NCBI RefSeq assembly: GCF_000315625.1 | Contig: NW_005434530.1 | Coordinates: 1 to 46,947 of the forward strand | DNA from: Guillardia theta CCMP2712 | Taxonomy: Eukaryota > Protista > Cryptophyta | Direction: 5' to 3' | DNA length: 46,947 bases | Part shown: positions 1 through 5,259 of the stretch, in pieces | Numbering within the stretch: position 1 is the stretch's first letter | How the letters are laid out: the number at the start of each line of letters is the position of its first letter | The notes under the pieces: generated by a model | What the model saw: only the letters and a program-made list of their open reading frames with translations | Databases searched by the model: none | What the model was told of the DNA's origin: nothing | Translations under genes and position numbers: made by a program

Positions 1-1491
1 CCAGTTCTCCTTGATCATCTTCCTTAATTTGTTCTCGTCGCGGGCCGAGACCCTTACCTCTTGTAGTAGCACAACCCCAGGTTGGAAGGACTGGATTAAG
101 TATGCGAGGATGTGCTTGAGAACAAAGTGATTGCAACCATTCACATTTTGTGAGATGAGGAAACCTGGGTCTGAGCTTTTTCGATGCATCTGCGCCCAAT
201 CATTGCCCCTTTGCTCCTCCTGCCTTTCCCCCCTCCGCTCCTTCCCTCTCTGGGAGGTTTTCTCTCCTGATTGTGCATTCTCCTCCATTTCCTCACCCAG
301 ATGTCTTGGTTGGGGCTTCGTGGGGGTCGCTTGCCGCTGGATTGCGATCGGCTGTACCTCCTCCTCAAGCTTTGTCGTCGAGGTCATCAGCCGCTGGATT
401 GCGTGTGGCTGTACCTCCTCCTCAAGCTTTGTCGTCGAGGTCATCAGCCGCTGGATTGCGTGTGGCTGTACCTCCTCCTCAAGCTTTGTCGTCGAGGTCA
501 TCAGCCGCTGGATTGCGTTCGGCTGTACCTCCTCCTCCGGCTTTGTCGTCGATGTCAAGTTCTCTTGCACCCTCGCCTCCTTCGGCAGAGATCGCAGAAT
601 TACCTGGGCCGTTTCCTCCATCTTCTCCAGATGGGTGAGAGCTTCGATCAGTTGTGTTCTGGTTTGCATCAGCCATTCTTGCGGAGGTCTTAGTCTTGTC
701 CTCGTTTCCATCGTTGCTAGCCAGTCTTGATTTGTCTCGCAGAGCAGTAGGGTGTGAAGGATAGCGAACACTCCGCAGTTGAAGTTATCTTCCTGTTGGA
801 AGGCTGAGCACCACTTTACCTGCCATGGGGCGTTGGTCTGATCGTCAAAGATGTGTTCGATCACTCCGATTGTCAGCTCAGCCATTTCTCTTGCTCCGTG
901 CTCCCCCGTTGTTGCAAGATTCCTCGCTCCCTCGATCCCTCGTGGGTCCCTCGTTGTGCTCGTTCTGTCCTCGCAGAGAGGGTCCAATATGTACGCGCAT
1001 CGCCGATCATATCTTAATGCAATTAGAATCCAGTGGTTGCTGTGGATGATAGTTGGAAACAGGAAGGTGTGTTGCTCATCTCTCAAGCTGCTGAGGTGAA
1101 ATCTGTTCCCGACTCTCAAGCGGGACGCCTCGTCTCGCAGACTGGATATTACCCTTGGCAAGAAGATGATGTTCCGCGTTTGCTGGTCCTCGTGGGCTCT
1201 CCCTTTGCGTACCATGTGTATTGCTCGTCCTCCTTGAAGAGCCTTGCTCATCTCATTGAGAGTAACTTCGATCATGTTCTCGCATAAAAATCCGCTTACT
1301 CCTCGATTGTTCAGGGCAGTGATGCCAAATTCCTTGTCGCCTCGTTTGTCTGACCATGGGATCTCCTCGATCCAATCAAAAAAATACAGTGTTCTATCTA
1401 CATGTTGCGTTTCCTTTGAAACCGTTTCCATCTCCCCCCCTTGCCTACTCCCGGCACTCCCCCCTTCCTCCTCCCTTCCTCCTCCTGTCAT
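1..1491 (-). CDS. Retrotransposon ORF2 (partial, open at window edge): Ulp1/C48-like cysteine protease + repeat linker + APE endonuclease N-terminus
   Basis: Manual translation from the ATG at 1491 gives 497 codons with no stop. Motifs: FLFPTIIHSNHWILI (His at 1035-1033), CAYILDPL (Asp at 984-982), FQQEDNFNCGVFA (Cys at 777-775), then 19-aa repeats, then GFLISQNVNGCNH...FQPGVVLLQEVRV. Confidence 0.88.
   Translation of the reverse strand, partial: MTGGGREEEGGSAGSRQGGEMETVSKETQHVDRTLYFFDWIEEIPWSDKRGDKEFGITALNNRGVSGFLCENMIEVTLNEMSKALQGGRAIHMVRKGRAHEDQQTRNIIFLPRVISSLRDEASRLRVGNRFHLSSLRDEQHTFLFPTIIHSNHWILIALRYDRRCAYILDPLCEDRTSTTRDPRGIEGARNLATTGEHGAREMAELTIGVIEHIFDDQTNAPWQVKWCSAFQQEDNFNCGVFAILHTLLLCETNQDWLATMETRTRLRPPQEWLMQTRTQLIEALTHLEKMEETAQVILRSLPKEARVQENLTSTTKPEEEVQPNAIQRLMTSTTKLEEEVQPHAIQRLMTSTTKLEEEVQPHAIQRLMTSTTKLEEEVQPIAIQRQATPTKPQPRHLGEEMEENAQSGEKTSQRGKERRGERQEEQRGNDWAQMHRKSSDPGFLISQNVNGCNHFVLKHILAYLIQSFQPGVVLLQEVRVSARDENKLRKMIKENW
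333..552. repeat. 57-bp coding tandem repeat, about 3.9 copies (19 aa, EEEVQPHAIQRLMTSTTKL)
   Basis: Unit gccgctggattgcg..ggctgtacctcctcctcaagctttgtcgtcgaggtcatca starts at 333, 390, 447 and 504, in frame within ORF2. Confidence 0.95.
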
Positions 1492-1500
1492 GATTCGGTT

Positions 1501-3606
1501 TTAGAGTTGAGAGGCAACCTCTCCCTCTTGGTTGCCACTCTCCTCTTCCATCTCCAGTCCCATCTCCTCCTCTGCCTTGCTCAAGAGAAACTCAATTTCG
1601 TCTCCCGAGCCAACGCTGCCTTGGTAGGTTAGCGTAGCTGTGAGAACTAATTTATTCAGGGCAAGAAACAACAGGTCAGTTCGAAATTCTTTTTGTTGTT
1701 TCTCCCCTCCTCTCCCTGTTGCTTTTGCAAAGGCTCCCTGGCGTCTTCTTGATGCTACCGTCTCCCACGCATGCTGCTCGCTTACTCTTGCAATCTTACT
1801 CTTCAAAACTTGCATGTCGTCGTCCTGGGTTGCCGAGGATGATTCCGCCCATTCCTTCAGTGTCGGAAAACATGCATTTCCAGGAGATGACAAGCTGTCG
1901 TACAGGCCGACGATGGCTCCATCGAGCCTGAGTTTGCAAGCTTGGTTTTCTGCACTCTGTCCCTGGTTGACAGTCTCCTCTAGAACTTTGTAGATGTCTT
2001 CGAGGACCACGTTTGCCTCTGGTTCTGGGATGTTGATCTCATTCTCGATCCGTTCGAGATCTACCTGAGCCCAAAGAGGCTCTGTAGGGGGTTCTGTAGC
2101 GATCGCTTCCCAGATGTTGGCACTGCCTGGCTCTAGGAGAAGAAGTTTCCCTGCCCTGTCCCATGGCGCAAAGGACCTGAGGATGTCAATCGCCGTTTCT
2201 TTTTCTGAGAAGCTGAGCACTAGATGTTCACCGTTCCAGCTGTTGGTCTCGACATCTTCTTTCGAGGAGATCTTGACGATGTGCTCAGCCGCTGACTCCT
2301 TCCAGCTCGCCACGATCCGTCTCAGTCCTCGAATTGTCATGCCCATAGAGAGATCCTCCCCGTCGCAGATCTGTTCAGCTTCCTCTCTGGTGAACCTTCC
2401 CTTCTGTGCTTTACTCTTGACCAGTACCTCATAGGTCACTCTTCGTGGTACTGCTCCTAGCGCGTCGGGCAAGAAGTCCAACCTAATTGGATGCTGTCTC
2501 GTTACCCTGGTGATTGCACTAACCTGAGTAGTGAACCATTTGAGGATCTTTTCATCTTCCGACATCAGTCCGAGGTGTATGCTTCCTCCATTCCTGTCGT
2601 CTCCCTCAAACATCCGTAGCGTGGTGCTCAGGACGTCCGTCGAAGAGCATCTCGCAATCCAATCGATCTCTCTTCCTTGTCGTATCTCGTCCACTCCGGC
2701 TGCTGCGAAAGTGCGTTTGTTGGGCTGACCTTGAGGTCTCCTCTTCGTCTTGACCTCTAGCTGCATGCCCGCTTCCGGCTGCACCTCCAACACAGCTATT
2801 CCTTGTTGCAGCAGGTGTTGACGATAGATCTCCGTAATCCCGGCTGAGTTCATGCCATTCATCTTGAGGAGGTGAGAGAACTCAGCTAGGGCCCCCGCCT
2901 TGCCAGAGTGCTTATCCTTCTGTGGCCTTATCTTGAAGGAGCAAGGATGCTTCGAATGCGCGTTCACCGCGCGGATCATCTTTCCGTCGATCCTGAAGTT
3001 CGTCTGTCCTTTCCACAGCAGTTCTGCTGCGTCGTTCAATTGGAGTGTTGCCACGACTGGGATTTCATCCACTGTCGGAATCAAATCTTTCTTGATCGGG
3101 GCTCTCCACGAGATGCATTTCTTGCCCTGCTCCTCGTGCACCAAGAGTCCTTGATCCTTCAACTTCTCACACAGTACCTCAACTTGTTTTATGTACTGGG
3201 TAGGAACTCCGAGGATAGCCATGGTAATCAGTTTACCACTCTCGGGGGACGCTCCTGAAGCATCGATGCAGGCACTCTTGTCTAGTACCTCCTGTTTGTC
3301 TGCGTTCCATGCAGAGACATACCACGACTGTCCTTCTTCCCCCCATTCTTTGATGGCATCCTCCTGGCTCCTGACTTCAGCATGTTTGCAGGTCTGTCGA
3401 ATGGCTTCGGCTAAGGCGTTCATCGAGACTTCCTTGGACTGCAAGGCTCTGCCTGTCCTGCTCTGAGGGTACTGCCTGACGAAGTGTTCCAATCTTCGGA
3501 TCAGCTCTCCTAGCGAAGGTGCTGAAGGCGTCGTGTCCTTGTTTAGGAACTGGGAAACTCGGACGCGAGCAATCTGTTTCCTTTCCTCTTTGGATAGATA
3601 CCACAT
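1501..3606 (-). CDS. Retrotransposon ORF1 (gag-like position), 701 aa from the first ATG; possible degenerate RRM
   Basis: Long intronless ORF directly upstream of ORF2 and in the same frame. ITMAILGVPTQY...GQTNFRIDGKMIRAV is loosely RRM-like. No CCHC knuckle seen. Confidence 0.75.
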   Translation of the reverse strand: MWYLSKEERKQIARVRVSQFLNKDTTPSAPSLGELIRRLEHFVRQYPQSRTGRALQSKEVSMNALAEAIRQTCKHAEVRSQEDAIKEWGEEGQSWYVSAWNADKQEVLDKSACIDASGASPESGKLITMAILGVPTQYIKQVEVLCEKLKDQGLLVHEEQGKKCISWRAPIKKDLIPTVDEIPVVATLQLNDAAELLWKGQTNFRIDGKMIRAVNAHSKHPCSFKIRPQKDKHSGKAGALAEFSHLLKMNGMNSAGITEIYRQHLLQQGIAVLEVQPEAGMQLEVKTKRRPQGQPNKRTFAAAGVDEIRQGREIDWIARCSSTDVLSTTLRMFEGDDRNGGSIHLGLMSEDEKILKWFTTQVSAITRVTRQHPIRLDFLPDALGAVPRRVTYEVLVKSKAQKGRFTREEAEQICDGEDLSMGMTIRGLRRIVASWKESAAEHIVKISSKEDVETNSWNGEHLVLSFSEKETAIDILRSFAPWDRAGKLLLLEPGSANIWEAIATEPPTEPLWAQVDLERIENEINIPEPEANVVLEDIYKVLEETVNQGQSAENQACKLRLDGAIVGLYDSLSSPGNACFPTLKEWAESSSATQDDDMQVLKSKIARVSEQHAWETVASRRRQGAFAKATGRGGEKQQKEFRTDLLFLALNKLVLTATLTYQGSVGSGDEIEFLLSKAEEEMGLEMEEESGNQEGEVASQL

Positions 3607-3710
3607 GATCAAACAACCGTTTCTGCACAGAAAAATATCCTGTTCAGCACCCTAGCTCGCAGGGATCCCCTCAAACTGCAGGGGAGGAGAGCATGTCTGT
3701 TACTCCAGCG

Positions 3711-3803
3711 CTAAACCCTAAACCCTAAACCCTAAACCCTAAACCCTAAACCCTAAACCCTAAACCCCAAACCCTAAACCCCAAATCCTAAACCCTAAAC
3801 CCT
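3711..3803. repeat. Telomeric repeat array (CCCTAAA)n / (TTTAGGG)n, about 13 units
   Basis: Perfect ctaaaccc units from 3711, with variant units (CCCCAAA, TCCTAAA) at the right end. The C-rich strand is on +, the polarity of a left chromosome end. Confidence 0.97.
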
Positions 3804-5259
3804 TACGAGATCCCTGTTAGACTAGAATAGAGCAAGGTGATAACAAGCCATGCAACCTACCTAGCATTCTAATAAACTCAACTATTACTACTAGGGTTTA
3901 GCCTACCTTAGGGTAAGTCTAAAGTATATGTACAGCAGCAGATCCATTAAATTACCTTGTCACTAAAAAATTCCAAAAGGGGATTTGAACGAAATGGGCT
4001 ACTAAACACTGCCTATTGTCGAAACAAGGTTTGCTCGTCCCCGTCTCCTTGAAAAGATGATATGTTGTAATTCAGCCCGGCGCTGCATGCCATCGGATGA
4101 TCATCTGATTGCTGCTCAGTGCCGAGTGAAGAATAAAAAAAAAACGCTCAGTGAAAGCGATGTCGGAAATAAAGCTGTAAAGGAAAAAAATTGTTTTTTT
4201 TCATGTACATGGTCGGGTGGCAACGTGTCTAGCGCAAGAGAACCGACCCCCTGAGCGCCAGAGGGGGTAGGGTAGTTCAAACATTTTGAATTGTACCAGG
4301 GGGGTAGAGGTGATATGACGGGGTGATGTCTTGACAACAGAGATGGGGTAGGTCAGCATTTGTTTGTTTGGGTGGTAGGGGTGGTCGAATCGATCTGGCG
4401 GATCGTCTCGTGCTGCATAGCGGCCACAGACGACCACGACGACGGAGAACGATGAAGAGAAGAGAAGAGAAGACATGTAGACCATTTGCGTGCCCCATGC
4501 TTGACGAACACAAACTTGATGCTAGCTAGAATGAGTTGTGAGCTTCAAAGAGAGGATACAACAAGAATGCAAAGTACCGAGTATTGCGCTAATGGTTGGA
4601 ATGAAGACTTTGTGAAGCATCAAAGAATACGTTTATCCAAGAAGAAATATTCCTAAAATCAATTTCGTAGATCAAAGATAGATAGAGCATGGTCTAAATA
4701 CAGAAACATGAGATGAGCAGGCTCTGAAGATGGTGTCGTATGCCTAACCAGGATCCATCTGGAACAAACGAAGAGACAGAGCGAGATCATACATGACTAC
4801 TGACAATCTGTCGCAAAGAAAGTAGAAGGAGAATTCTTACAGGATGACGATAAGAAGGAGCTAGCGACATGGATTGAACACTGTCTGTGCGAACATGTAA
4901 CGTGTAGCGACGTTTCAAGAGGATGAGGCTGATGAGTAGTGCATCGTATATGCATGAGTGACATTGATTTCTGCAAAATGATGACTTCCTCTTCAAATTT
5001 TCACATTTTGATGCTTGCCTTTCTTGTTTCATATCGCCTTGAGCTAAAAGCGTCTGCCTGACGAAAAGATAGCGTTGTAAAACTTATCTCTTAAGGTTTC
5101 CCGTGCTTGCTACAAACAAGTTGACCTCTTTTCTTGTTGCAGAGCGCCTTCAGCTTTGTTCAAAGCCACTTGCCAGCATTTCTCTGGTGTTGTTTCCTCT
5201 CCTCTGATTGTTTAACTCACCTACTTAACAGGTTTGAAACCTGTTGAAAGATTAGAGGC

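What the first reader, a model, noticed from the sequence alone, without database searches (positions are those of the whole stretch)
1..3803. Telomere-joined non-LTR retrotransposon encoding a Ulp1-like protease plus APE endonuclease
Seen: on the element's sense strand the junction reads (TTTAGGG)n-TTTAG|CGCTGGAG, followed by a 104-nt UTR, ORF1 and ORF2 (protease-repeat-APE). The 5' end therefore appears complete and is fused directly to a telomeric array, with the sense strand on the G-rich strand, pointing toward the presumed chromosome end. Known: insect SART/TRAS elements are APE-type LINEs that insert into telomeric repeats (SART in this orientation), and NeSL-type elements carry a Ulp1-like protease but use a restriction-like endonuclease. 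Inference: this is a TTTAGGG-targeting LINE combining telomere targeting, APE and a SUMO/Ubl-type protease, a combination I do not recognise from algae. It could lengthen or buffer chromosome ends.
Basis: partly seen in the sequence, partly recalled or inferred. Interest (0 to 1): 0.92.

Follow-up and report, generated by a model that had tools for sequence, protein, structure and literature searches.

The report
Telomere-targeting dual-endonuclease LINE retrotransposon
The window starts inside a roughly 10.3 kb jumping gene that inserts only into the chromosome-end repeat (TTTAGGG)n, carries two different DNA-cutting enzymes plus a SUMO-protease-like domain, and builds head-to-tail arrays at most chromosome ends of what is probably a cryptophyte alga.

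Summary
On the minus strand, about 13 TTTAGGG units (3711-3803) abut the 5' end of a LINE at 3710. A 104-nt UTR, ORF1 (701 aa) and the start of ORF2 (protease, 19-aa repeats, APE) follow.

The window is a contig start. Other copies show the whole element is about 10.3 kb. ORF2 (about 2,500 aa) continues with RT, an RNase H-like domain lacking its catalytic residues, a CCHC knuckle and a C-terminal restriction-like endonuclease (RLE).

APE plus RLE is the hallmark of the Dualen/RandI group. It is therefore not an R1/SART-type or NeSL-type element.

Telomere targeting is strongly supported:
- 20 of 21 distinct 5' ends follow telomeric repeats.
- About 78 of 99 listed 3' ends run into them.
- Nearly all copies lie at contig ends with the 3' end pointing outward.
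- A second family (48% aa identity) and independent metagenome assemblies show the same junctions.
- More distant relatives (30-35% identity) do not.

ORF1-only partner elements share the 3' end. A telomerase gene is present, so a telomere-maintenance role is speculative.

I found no published telomere-specific Dualen-type element. Other first-stage readers of this scan noted the same system on other pieces of this genome.

The parts
3711..3803 (-). Telomeric tract, about 13 units, G-rich strand on the minus strand. This is the target sequence immediately 5' of the element.
   Evidence: TRF period 7, 13.3 copies, score 165
3607..3710 (-). 5' end and 104-nt 5' UTR of the element. This copy has no 20-nt 5' tandem units.
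1501..3606 (-). ORF1, 701 aa plus stop. No known domain. Its C-terminal ~320 aa are shared with the ORFs of the ORF1-only partner elements.
1..1491 (-). First 497 codons of ORF2 (full length about 2,480-2,500 aa in other copies), cut by the contig start.
595..1308 (-). Ulp1/SENP-like (Peptidase C48, clan CE) domain, ORF2 aa 62-299. H153, D170, Q233 and C239 are present.
   Evidence: (profile vs yeast Ulp1 E 1.4e-16)
333..557 (-). 57-nt tandem repeat x3.9 inside ORF2 (19-aa units) forming the linker between protease and APE.
1..174 (-). N-terminal ~58 residues of the APE (Exo_endo_phos) endonuclease domain, with the QNVNG and LLQEV motifs.
3805..3901 (+). Inverted, 5'-truncated 3' end (~87 nt) of an ORF1-only partner element with a TAC-type tail, followed by a 10-nt telomeric remnant. 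It points away from the contig end.

Best explanation
Window 1-3710 (minus strand) is the 5' 3.7 kb of a young, roughly 10.3 kb two-ORF non-LTR retrotransposon that integrates specifically into the telomeric repeat.

ORF2 encodes, in order:
- a Ulp1-like cysteine protease;
- 19-aa repeats;
- an APE endonuclease;
- RT;
- an RNase H-like domain with its catalytic residues replaced;
- a CCHC knuckle;
- an R2-type restriction-like endonuclease.
This is the dual-endonuclease architecture of the Dualen/RandI group.

Inferred mechanism:
- Target-primed reverse transcription starts from an endonuclease nick in the C-rich strand, near CCC^TA^AA.
- The (UAC)n tail of the RNA is copied first.
- The sense strand therefore becomes continuous with the G-rich strand, with the 3' end pointing distally.
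- The G strand is cut after TTTAGG, which would leave a 2-bp (or 2+7n bp) stagger.

Repeated insertion, together with ORF1-only partner elements that share the 3' end and are presumably mobilised in trans, builds head-to-tail arrays separated by telomeric tracts of 14 bp to more than 750 bp at most chromosome ends. Telomerase is still encoded, so the elements most likely live in telomeres as a safe haven and do not replace telomerase.

Shown: anatomy, domain homologies, junctions, distribution and orientation. Inferred: nick positions, which endonuclease cuts which strand, trans-mobilisation and the protease's role.
For: Whole element
- about 10.27 kb in C64 and C15; ORF2 is 2,499 aa (C64) or 2,481 aa (metagenome contigs).

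Domains
- RVT_1 3e-35 and Exo_endo_phos 3e-9.
- C-terminal profile vs R2 proteins E 4.8e-21, with invariant C-C-H-C, PD, E, R and K..Y.
- N-terminal profile vs Ulp1 1.4e-16. The AF2 model matches only SENP/Ulp1/NEDP1 folds.
- The RNase H homolog has D/E/D changed to H/H/K.
- The same [C48]-APE-RT-RNH-RLE order occurs in about 35 long relatives.

Targeting
- 21 distinct 5' ends: 13 show telomeric repeats within 150 nt. The other 7 show only 20-nt unit arrays there; for the three I followed further upstream (C171, C15, C231) the array is preceded by telomeric repeats. One (C203) has none.
- The 3' motif occurs 154 times against 0 in the control. About 78 of 99 listed places are followed within 30 nt by telomeric repeats.
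- Minus-strand copies sit at low contig coordinates and plus-strand copies at high ones.
- A second family at 48% aa identity (58% over the RT stretch), on metagenome contigs L047 and L048, has the same junctions.
- Independent assemblies L054 and L055 carry the same element ending in the tail plus telomeric repeats.
- Relatives at 30-35% identity are not telomere-flanked.

Age, partners and telomerase
- Copies are 97-100% identical; some have open ORFs and others frameshifts.
- Partners.
- TERT RBD 8.3e-12, and a long repeat array starting 7 nt from a contig start at C8:7-181.
Against: - No RT phylogeny against Repbase reference clades could be run, so Dualen/RandI membership rests on architecture and on distant relatives.
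- The protease of the original Dualen is described as Josephin-like (PMC8557442), not Ulp1-like.
- One copy (C203) lacks a telomeric flank. One (C176) and a few 3' ends point inward.
- The assembly is fragmented, and contigs often end inside the elements.
- Transcription is only hinted at: runs guessed to be RNA hold 76-93% of ORF1 words.
Confidence: 0.85

Rival explanations
1. The element is not target-specific. Copies accumulate at chromosome ends because subtelomeres tolerate insertions and spread by recombination or segmental duplication, which copies the same telomere-element junction many times.
For: Subtelomeres commonly homogenise by gene conversion. Several copies are 99-100% identical. 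The assembly is fragmented at these places.
Against: - Junctions differ between copies in the length and variants of the telomeric tract, in the number of 5' units (0 to ~40) and in the upstream neighbour.
- About 78 of 99 listed 3' ends of several families start the telomeric repeat in the same phase.
- A family only 48% identical, and contigs from other samples, have the same junctions.
- Copies pointing inward (C176, the window's 3805-3901 fragment) and the C47 copy, which follows non-telomeric sequence and a short tract, are still joined to telomeric units.
Confidence: 0.05
2. End-attachment model (HeT-A/TART or EN-minus Penelope style). The RNA is copied directly onto the chromosome's G-rich 3' overhang without endonuclease, and telomerase later adds repeats.
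For: Arrays are terminal and interleaved with telomeric tracts. An ORF1-only partner recalls HeT-A.
Against: - The geometry is wrong. Priming from the G-strand 3' end would put the element's 3' end proximal and its sense strand on the C-rich strand. Here the 3' tail is distal and the sense strand is the G-rich strand in nearly all copies.
- Both endonuclease domains keep their catalytic motifs.
- At least one inserted 3' end lies distal to a telomeric tract of more than 750 bp (C21).
Confidence: 0.03
3. The elements are a co-opted part of telomere maintenance or capping: they lengthen or buffer ends alongside, or partly instead of, telomerase.
For: They occupy most assembled chromosome ends on at least 50 contigs and point outward. 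An autonomous-plus-partner pairing parallels Drosophila. Conservation of the target across two divergent families suggests a long association.
Against: - A TERT gene fragment is present and long pure repeat arrays exist, one starting 7 nt from a contig start (C8).
- Many copies are frameshifted.
- There is no functional evidence. Telomere-specific SART/TRAS elements coexist with telomerase without a proven essential role (my own knowledge).
Confidence: 0.1
4. The 3710/3711 junction in this window is an assembly artefact that joins a telomeric tract to a repeat.
For: The window starts a contig inside a repeat.
Against: The same type of junction occurs in 20 other copies on different contigs. 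The second family shows it on the metagenome contig L048. Independent assemblies of this same family (L054, L055) begin inside the 5' unit array and end in the tail plus telomeric repeats.
Confidence: 0.02

Closest known systems
Dualen/RandI non-LTR retrotransposons (Kojima & Fujiwara 2005, Chlamydomonas; Dualen-4b_cRei is active, PMC9977147)
   Same: One ORF carries an N-terminal APE and a C-terminal CCHC plus restriction-like endonuclease, with RT and an RNase H-type domain between them and a cysteine protease at the N-terminus. PMC9977147 states that APE and RLE occur together only in this clade. LINE/Dualen is reported as abundant in cryptophytes (PMC12747079).
   Different: - Strict telomeric-repeat target. 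Described Dualens insert dispersedly or at centromeres, with long target-site duplications.
- The protease is Ulp1/C48-like, not Josephin-like (PMC8557442).
- The RNase H catalytic residues are lost.
- There is a separate 701-aa ORF1, ORF1-only partners, a (TAC)n tail and 5' tandem 20-nt units.
SART1/TRAS1 (R1 clade) of Bombyx and other insects
   Same: Endonuclease-dependent, phase-specific insertion into the telomeric repeat. SART shares the sense-on-G-strand orientation. Both form head-to-tail arrays and coexist with telomeric repeats. The second family here uses a UAAUG stop-start overlap, as I recall for SART1.
   Different: SART/TRAS have APE only, no RLE, no protease, a poly(A) tail and a gag-like ORF1 with zinc knuckles. 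They belong to a different RT clade and host kingdom.
NeSL-1 / Utopia (NeSL clade)
   Same: N-terminal Ulp1-like protease, C-terminal CCHC plus RLE, and target specificity for a repeated sequence (PMC4640811).
   Different: NeSL and Utopia lack APE. Their targets are spliced-leader or U2 snRNA genes, and they have a single ORF.
HeT-A / TART / TAHRE of Drosophila
   Same: A partnership of an RT-coding element with an RT-less, gag-only element that together form terminal arrays.
   Different: The Drosophila elements attach by their 3' ends to the chromosome end, so the orientation is opposite. They insert into no telomerase repeats, and telomerase is absent. They belong to the Jockey clade.
Zepp (L1 clade) of Chlorella; MoTeR of Pyricularia; GilM/GilT of Giardia; Tx1-1_ACar (listed in PMC10088271)
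   Same: Retrotransposons associated with, or inserted into, telomeric repeats in protists, algae, fungi or vertebrates.
   Different: None has dual endonucleases. Zepp is an APE-only, poly(A) L1-type element and is not strictly repeat-specific. As I recall, MoTeR has only an RLE and GilM/GilT have a C-terminal endonuclease rather than an APE.

Membership tests
Dualen/RandI group | APE endonuclease N-terminal to RT and restriction-like endonuclease C-terminal, in the same ORF | tested here: met
   Exo_endo_phos 3e-9 at aa ~445-640. The C-terminal profile hits the CCHC+RLE region of R2 at E 4.8e-21, with PD2374-5, E2390 and K2414 conserved. The same order occurs in about 35 relatives.
Dualen/RandI group | RNase H domain between RT and RLE | tested here: met
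   A homologous domain lies at aa ~2029-2193 and aligns with Pfam RNase_H-positive relatives. Its catalytic D/E/D are replaced by H/H/K here and in P0001, so it is probably inactive.
Dualen/RandI group | Cysteine protease domain of the type reported for Dualen (Josephin-like, per PMC8557442) | tested here: not met
   The protease here is Ulp1/C48. A Josephin (PF02099)+APE+RT+RNH protein appears only among distant RT relatives (P0206, 25% identity).
Dualen/RandI group | RT groups with Dualen/RandI reference sequences in a phylogeny | not testable with these tools
   No Repbase references were available. Indirect evidence: the nearest solved RTs are R2 (1.2e-23) and then L1 ORF2p (7e-14).
SART/TRAS (R1 clade telomere-specific LINEs) | APE as the only endonuclease; poly(A) tail | tested here: not met
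   An RLE is present and the tail is (TAC)n.
SART/TRAS (R1 clade telomere-specific LINEs) | Insertion at a fixed phase of the telomeric repeat, in a fixed orientation | tested here: met
   This shows that it works like them, not that it belongs to them.
NeSL/Utopia | N-terminal Ulp1-like protease plus C-terminal RLE, without APE | tested here: not met
   The protease and RLE are present, but so is an APE domain with its motifs intact.
Peptidase C48 (Ulp1/SENP) | His-Asp-Cys triad with an oxyanion Gln in the clan CE fold | tested here: met
   H153, D170, Q233 and C239 are aligned. The single-sequence Pfam score is 17.9 bits, below the 20.7 cut-off, but the family profile scores 1.4e-16 against Ulp1. 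Foldseek top hits are all SENP/Ulp1/NEDP1, probability 1.00. Catalytic activity is untested.

The most novel reading that the evidence does not exclude
A two-component system (an autonomous dual-endonuclease LINE plus ORF1-only partners) has become a structural and possibly functional part of cryptophyte chromosome ends. This would be convergent with Drosophila HeT-A/TART and Bombyx SART/TRAS. In this reading the Ulp1-like protease acts on SUMOylated telomere or chromatin proteins to gain access, and the elements contribute to end buffering or length homeostasis next to telomerase.
Probability: 0.12. Interest if true: 0.85.

Novelty: new variant of a known kind. Interest (0 to 1): 0.66.

Why it matters
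Dual-endonuclease LINEs sit at the presumed transition from RLE-type to APE-type elements. Why they keep two nucleases is an open question.

A lineage with one short, defined, repeated target makes that question directly testable: which nuclease nicks the C strand and which nicks the G strand of the telomeric repeat.

It also adds an independent origin of telomere-specific retrotransposition, in a cryptophyte and in a LINE group not known for it. It comes complete with an RT-less partner, which broadens the comparison with insect telomeric elements.

Practically, it explains why the chromosome ends of this assembly break into contigs. It also contradicts a repeat survey that reported no LINE/Dualen in Guillardia theta (PMC12747079), if this genome is that species.

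Tried and rejected
There is therefore no read-level check of the junction and no RNA coverage. One local script regex began at base 3709.
- ORF1 gave nothing usable: no Pfam family, no Atlas lead, and an AF2 model with pLDDT 46. I did not use that model for a fold search.
- Word-based protein searches found only two close full-length relatives.
- Cluster look-up gave no organism names for distant relatives.
- A consensus 3' hairpin (UUAGA pairing with UCUAA) across families is weak: -0.38 kcal/mol, with few compensatory pairs. I treat it only as a lead.
- Single-sequence PDB search of the C-terminal 1,000 aa found nothing. Only the family profile did.
- Rejected readings: APE-only SART-like LINE (an RLE is present); NeSL (an APE is present); Zepp/L1 (no poly(A), a different architecture); green-algal host (an ORF1 fragment is annotated as Guillardia theta).
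- I built no consensus and repaired no frame.
Full report
**Observation**

- On the minus strand of the window, a 93-bp tract of the 7-nt telomeric unit (3711-3803; 13.3 copies, TRF score 165) is joined at 3710 to CGCTGGAG....
- A 104-nt leader follows, then ORF1 (ATG 3606 to stop 1501-1503, 701 aa).
- After 9 nt, in the same frame, comes ORF2 from ATG 1491. It stays open for 497 codons to base 1.
- The window is the first 46.9 kb of contig C144 of an 87.1 Mb, 669-contig assembly, so the element runs off a contig start.

**The whole element**

- A DNA search of the genome found about a dozen copies covering most or all of the 3.7 kb stretch, at 95-100% identity, plus many fragments.
- In C64 and C15 the element is about 10.27 kb.
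- ORF2 is 2,499 aa in C64 and 2,481 aa in two independent metagenome assemblies that encode an identical ORF1.
- Pfam finds RVT_1 (3e-35) and Exo_endo_phos (3e-9).

The C-terminal 270 aa:
- I aligned them with 20 relatives from an exhaustive HMMER search.
- They show invariant C-C-H-C, PD, E..R and K..Y.
- The profile hits the zinc-knuckle plus restriction-like endonuclease region of R2 proteins at E 4.8e-21 (9nl3), 6.4e-21 (9dou) and 0.0015 (R2Bm 8gh6).

The N-terminal domain:
- It is weak as a single sequence: C48 at 17.9 bits, below the cut-off; PDB 6dg4 at E 0.002.
- As a 12-sequence profile it hits yeast Ulp1 at 1.4e-16 and SENP1 at 1e-12, with H153/W154/Q233/C239 invariant.
- An AF2 model (pTM 0.72) retrieves only SENP/Ulp1/NEDP1-type folds.

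Between RT and the knuckle lies a homolog of the RNase H domain of the relatives. Its catalytic D, E and D are H, H and K here and E, N and Q in the nearest family.

The architecture is therefore C48 protease - 19-aa repeats - APE - RT - dead RNase H - CCHC - RLE.

**Classification**

- APE and RLE together are stated to be unique to the Dualen clade (PMC9977147, citing Kojima and Fujiwara 2005; also PMC4640811).
- About 35 long metagenomic relatives share the order [C48]-APE-RT-RNH-RLE. Roughly half of them carry the C48 domain.
- A Josephin+APE+RT+RNH protein appears among the distant RT relatives (P0206). The original Dualen protease is described as Josephin-like (PMC8557442).
- The RT is closest to R2 and then to L1 among solved structures.
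- I could not run the RT phylogeny against Repbase references. I therefore file the element as a Dualen/RandI-type element on architecture, with the protease type as a tested difference.

**Target specificity**

5' ends:
- Of 21 distinct 5' ends, 13 show telomeric repeats within 150 nt upstream.
- Seven show only tandem 20-nt units in that view. For the three I followed further upstream (C171, C15, C231) the unit array is itself preceded by telomeric repeats.
- One (C203) has a non-telomeric flank.
- The usual joint is ...TTTAGG | AGG/AGA | element.

3' ends:
- The 3' terminal motif occurs 154 times in the genome, against 0 for the reversed control.
- About 78 of the first 99 listed places are followed within 30 nt by the telomeric repeat, nearly always as tail-(TA)GGGTTT.
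- There are three tail types. The autonomous family ends ...AATAAAATCGAC(TAC)n.

Position and orientation:
- Minus-strand copies lie at low contig coordinates and plus-strand copies at high ones. Most of the longer copies lie within roughly 14 kb of a contig end.
- There are a few exceptions (C176, C3, C14, C26, C72, C118, C134 and the window's own 3805-3901 fragment).

Other families and assemblies:
- The nearest relatives, P0001 and P0002, are 46-48% identical over the C-terminal 600 aa and 57-58% over the RT stretch. They come from JGI metagenome contigs.
- They have the same two-ORF structure, and they show their own 5' unit duplications and the same telomeric joints. L048 is flanked by telomeric repeats on both sides and lies downstream of a partner-type 3' end; L047 starts in its own 5' units and ends in telomeric repeats.
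- A 3' fragment of that family also lies in this genome.
- ENA contigs L054 and L055 start in the 20-nt units and end in (TAC)n plus telomeric repeats.
- Five contigs of relatives at 30-35% identity carry no telomeric repeats. One ends in a CAG microsatellite.
- The target specificity is therefore a derived, heritable property of a subclade.

**Mechanism (inferred)**

- With the sense strand on the G-rich strand and the 3' tail distal, target-primed reverse transcription must start from a 3'-OH in the C-rich strand. This requires an endonuclease nick, not the G overhang.
- The shared TA leaves the nick at CCC^TAAA or CCCTA^AA.
- The upstream flank ends at TTTAGG, which fits a second cut 2 bp (or 2+7n bp) away.
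- Which nuclease makes which cut is unknown.
- Both keep their catalytic motifs: APE has QNVNG, LLQEV, GDFNA and DHRA; RLE has PD, E and K.

**Partners**

- Elements of roughly 2.7-4 kb with a single ORF share the last ~20 nt and a TTTAGAC box with the autonomous element.
- They insert in the same phase and orientation.
- The 847-aa partner ORF is homologous to the C-terminal half of ORF1 (E 6e-16) and to the 724-aa ORF of the distal neighbour in C64.
- This lead came from earlier first-reader notes on other pieces of this genome. I checked it here.

**Context**

- A TERT RNA-binding-domain match exists at C21:562211-562372 (8.3e-12).
- Long pure repeat arrays occur near contig ends. One begins 7 nt from a contig start (C8:7-181).
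- Elements are embedded in tracts of more than 750 bp (C21).
- Some copies have open ORFs and others have frameshifts.
- Runs guessed to be RNA hold 76-93% of ORF1 words, which is a weak hint of transcription.
- An ORF1 fragment is annotated in NCBI as a hypothetical protein of Guillardia theta CCMP2712 (94% identity). The host is therefore probably that cryptophyte or a near relative, not a green alga.

**Literature**

- The list of telomere-associated retrotransposons in PMC10088271 comprises SART/TRAS, GilM/GilT, Zepp, MoTeR, Tx1-1_ACar, Athena and HeT-A/TART/TAHRE. It holds no dual-endonuclease element.
- Seven full-text searches found no telomere-specific Dualen/RandI.
- Repbase Reports and subscription journals were not searchable.

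**Limits**

I worked beside those places afterwards.
- I made no consensus and no repaired frame.

**Verdict**

This is a real, well-supported, telomeric-repeat-specific dual-endonuclease LINE with RT-less partners. It is a new variant of a known kind.

Noticed in passing
C15, C58, C63, C171, C231 and others (L035, L037, L041-L043); L047; L054/L055: Between the telomeric tract and the 5' end lie 0 to ~40 tandem copies of a 20-nt unit (AGG/AGA plus the element's first 17 nt). The partner and the second autonomous family do the same with their own 5' ends. The origin is unexplained: template switching at the RNA 5' end, upstream transcription starts or slippage.
   Followed up: partly
window 3805-3901 (+): A 5'-truncated ~87-nt 3' end of a TAC-tailed ORF1-only partner lies inverted directly against the telomeric tract. 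A 10-nt telomeric remnant follows, then unique sequence, giving a head-to-head arrangement at the proximal edge of the array.
   Followed up: partly
L045 (C64:14100-18140, minus strand); L031:143-2314 (-): ORF1-only partner elements of about 4 kb with a single 847-aa or 724-aa ORF. They share the 3' end with the autonomous LINE and are interleaved with it.
   Followed up: partly
L045:2572-2775 (-) = C64:13571-13774; L047, L048: A second autonomous family (48% aa identity, (TAA)n tail, TAATG stop-start overlap between ORF1 and ORF2) is present as a fragment in this genome and at full length in two JGI metagenome contigs.
   Followed up: partly
window 1491-1503 (-): ORF1 and ORF2 of the window family are in the same frame, separated only by TAA plus three codons. 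Stop-codon readthrough to an ORF1-ORF2 fusion, which the protease might process, is conceivable. The sister family instead uses an overlapping TAATG.
   Followed up: no
L020 (C203) and L039 (C176:10114-13800, +): Two exceptions. The C203 copy has 5' units but no telomeric repeat upstream. The C176 copy lies near a contig start but points inward, behind a short degenerate telomeric tract; it could be an interstitial site or a misoriented contig.
   Followed up: no
L050 (metagenome, P0165): A distant C48-APE-RT-RNH-RLE relative ends in a long (CAG)n run. It may be a microsatellite-targeting or microsatellite-tailed member of the same clade.
   Followed up: no
all families, last ~110 nt (alignment A5): A conserved TTTAGAC box lies 55-75 nt upstream of the TCTAATAAA box. 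The two can pair (UUAGA with UCUAA), with a few compensatory changes inside. This may be the 3' recognition hairpin for the RT, but the support is weak.
   Followed up: partly
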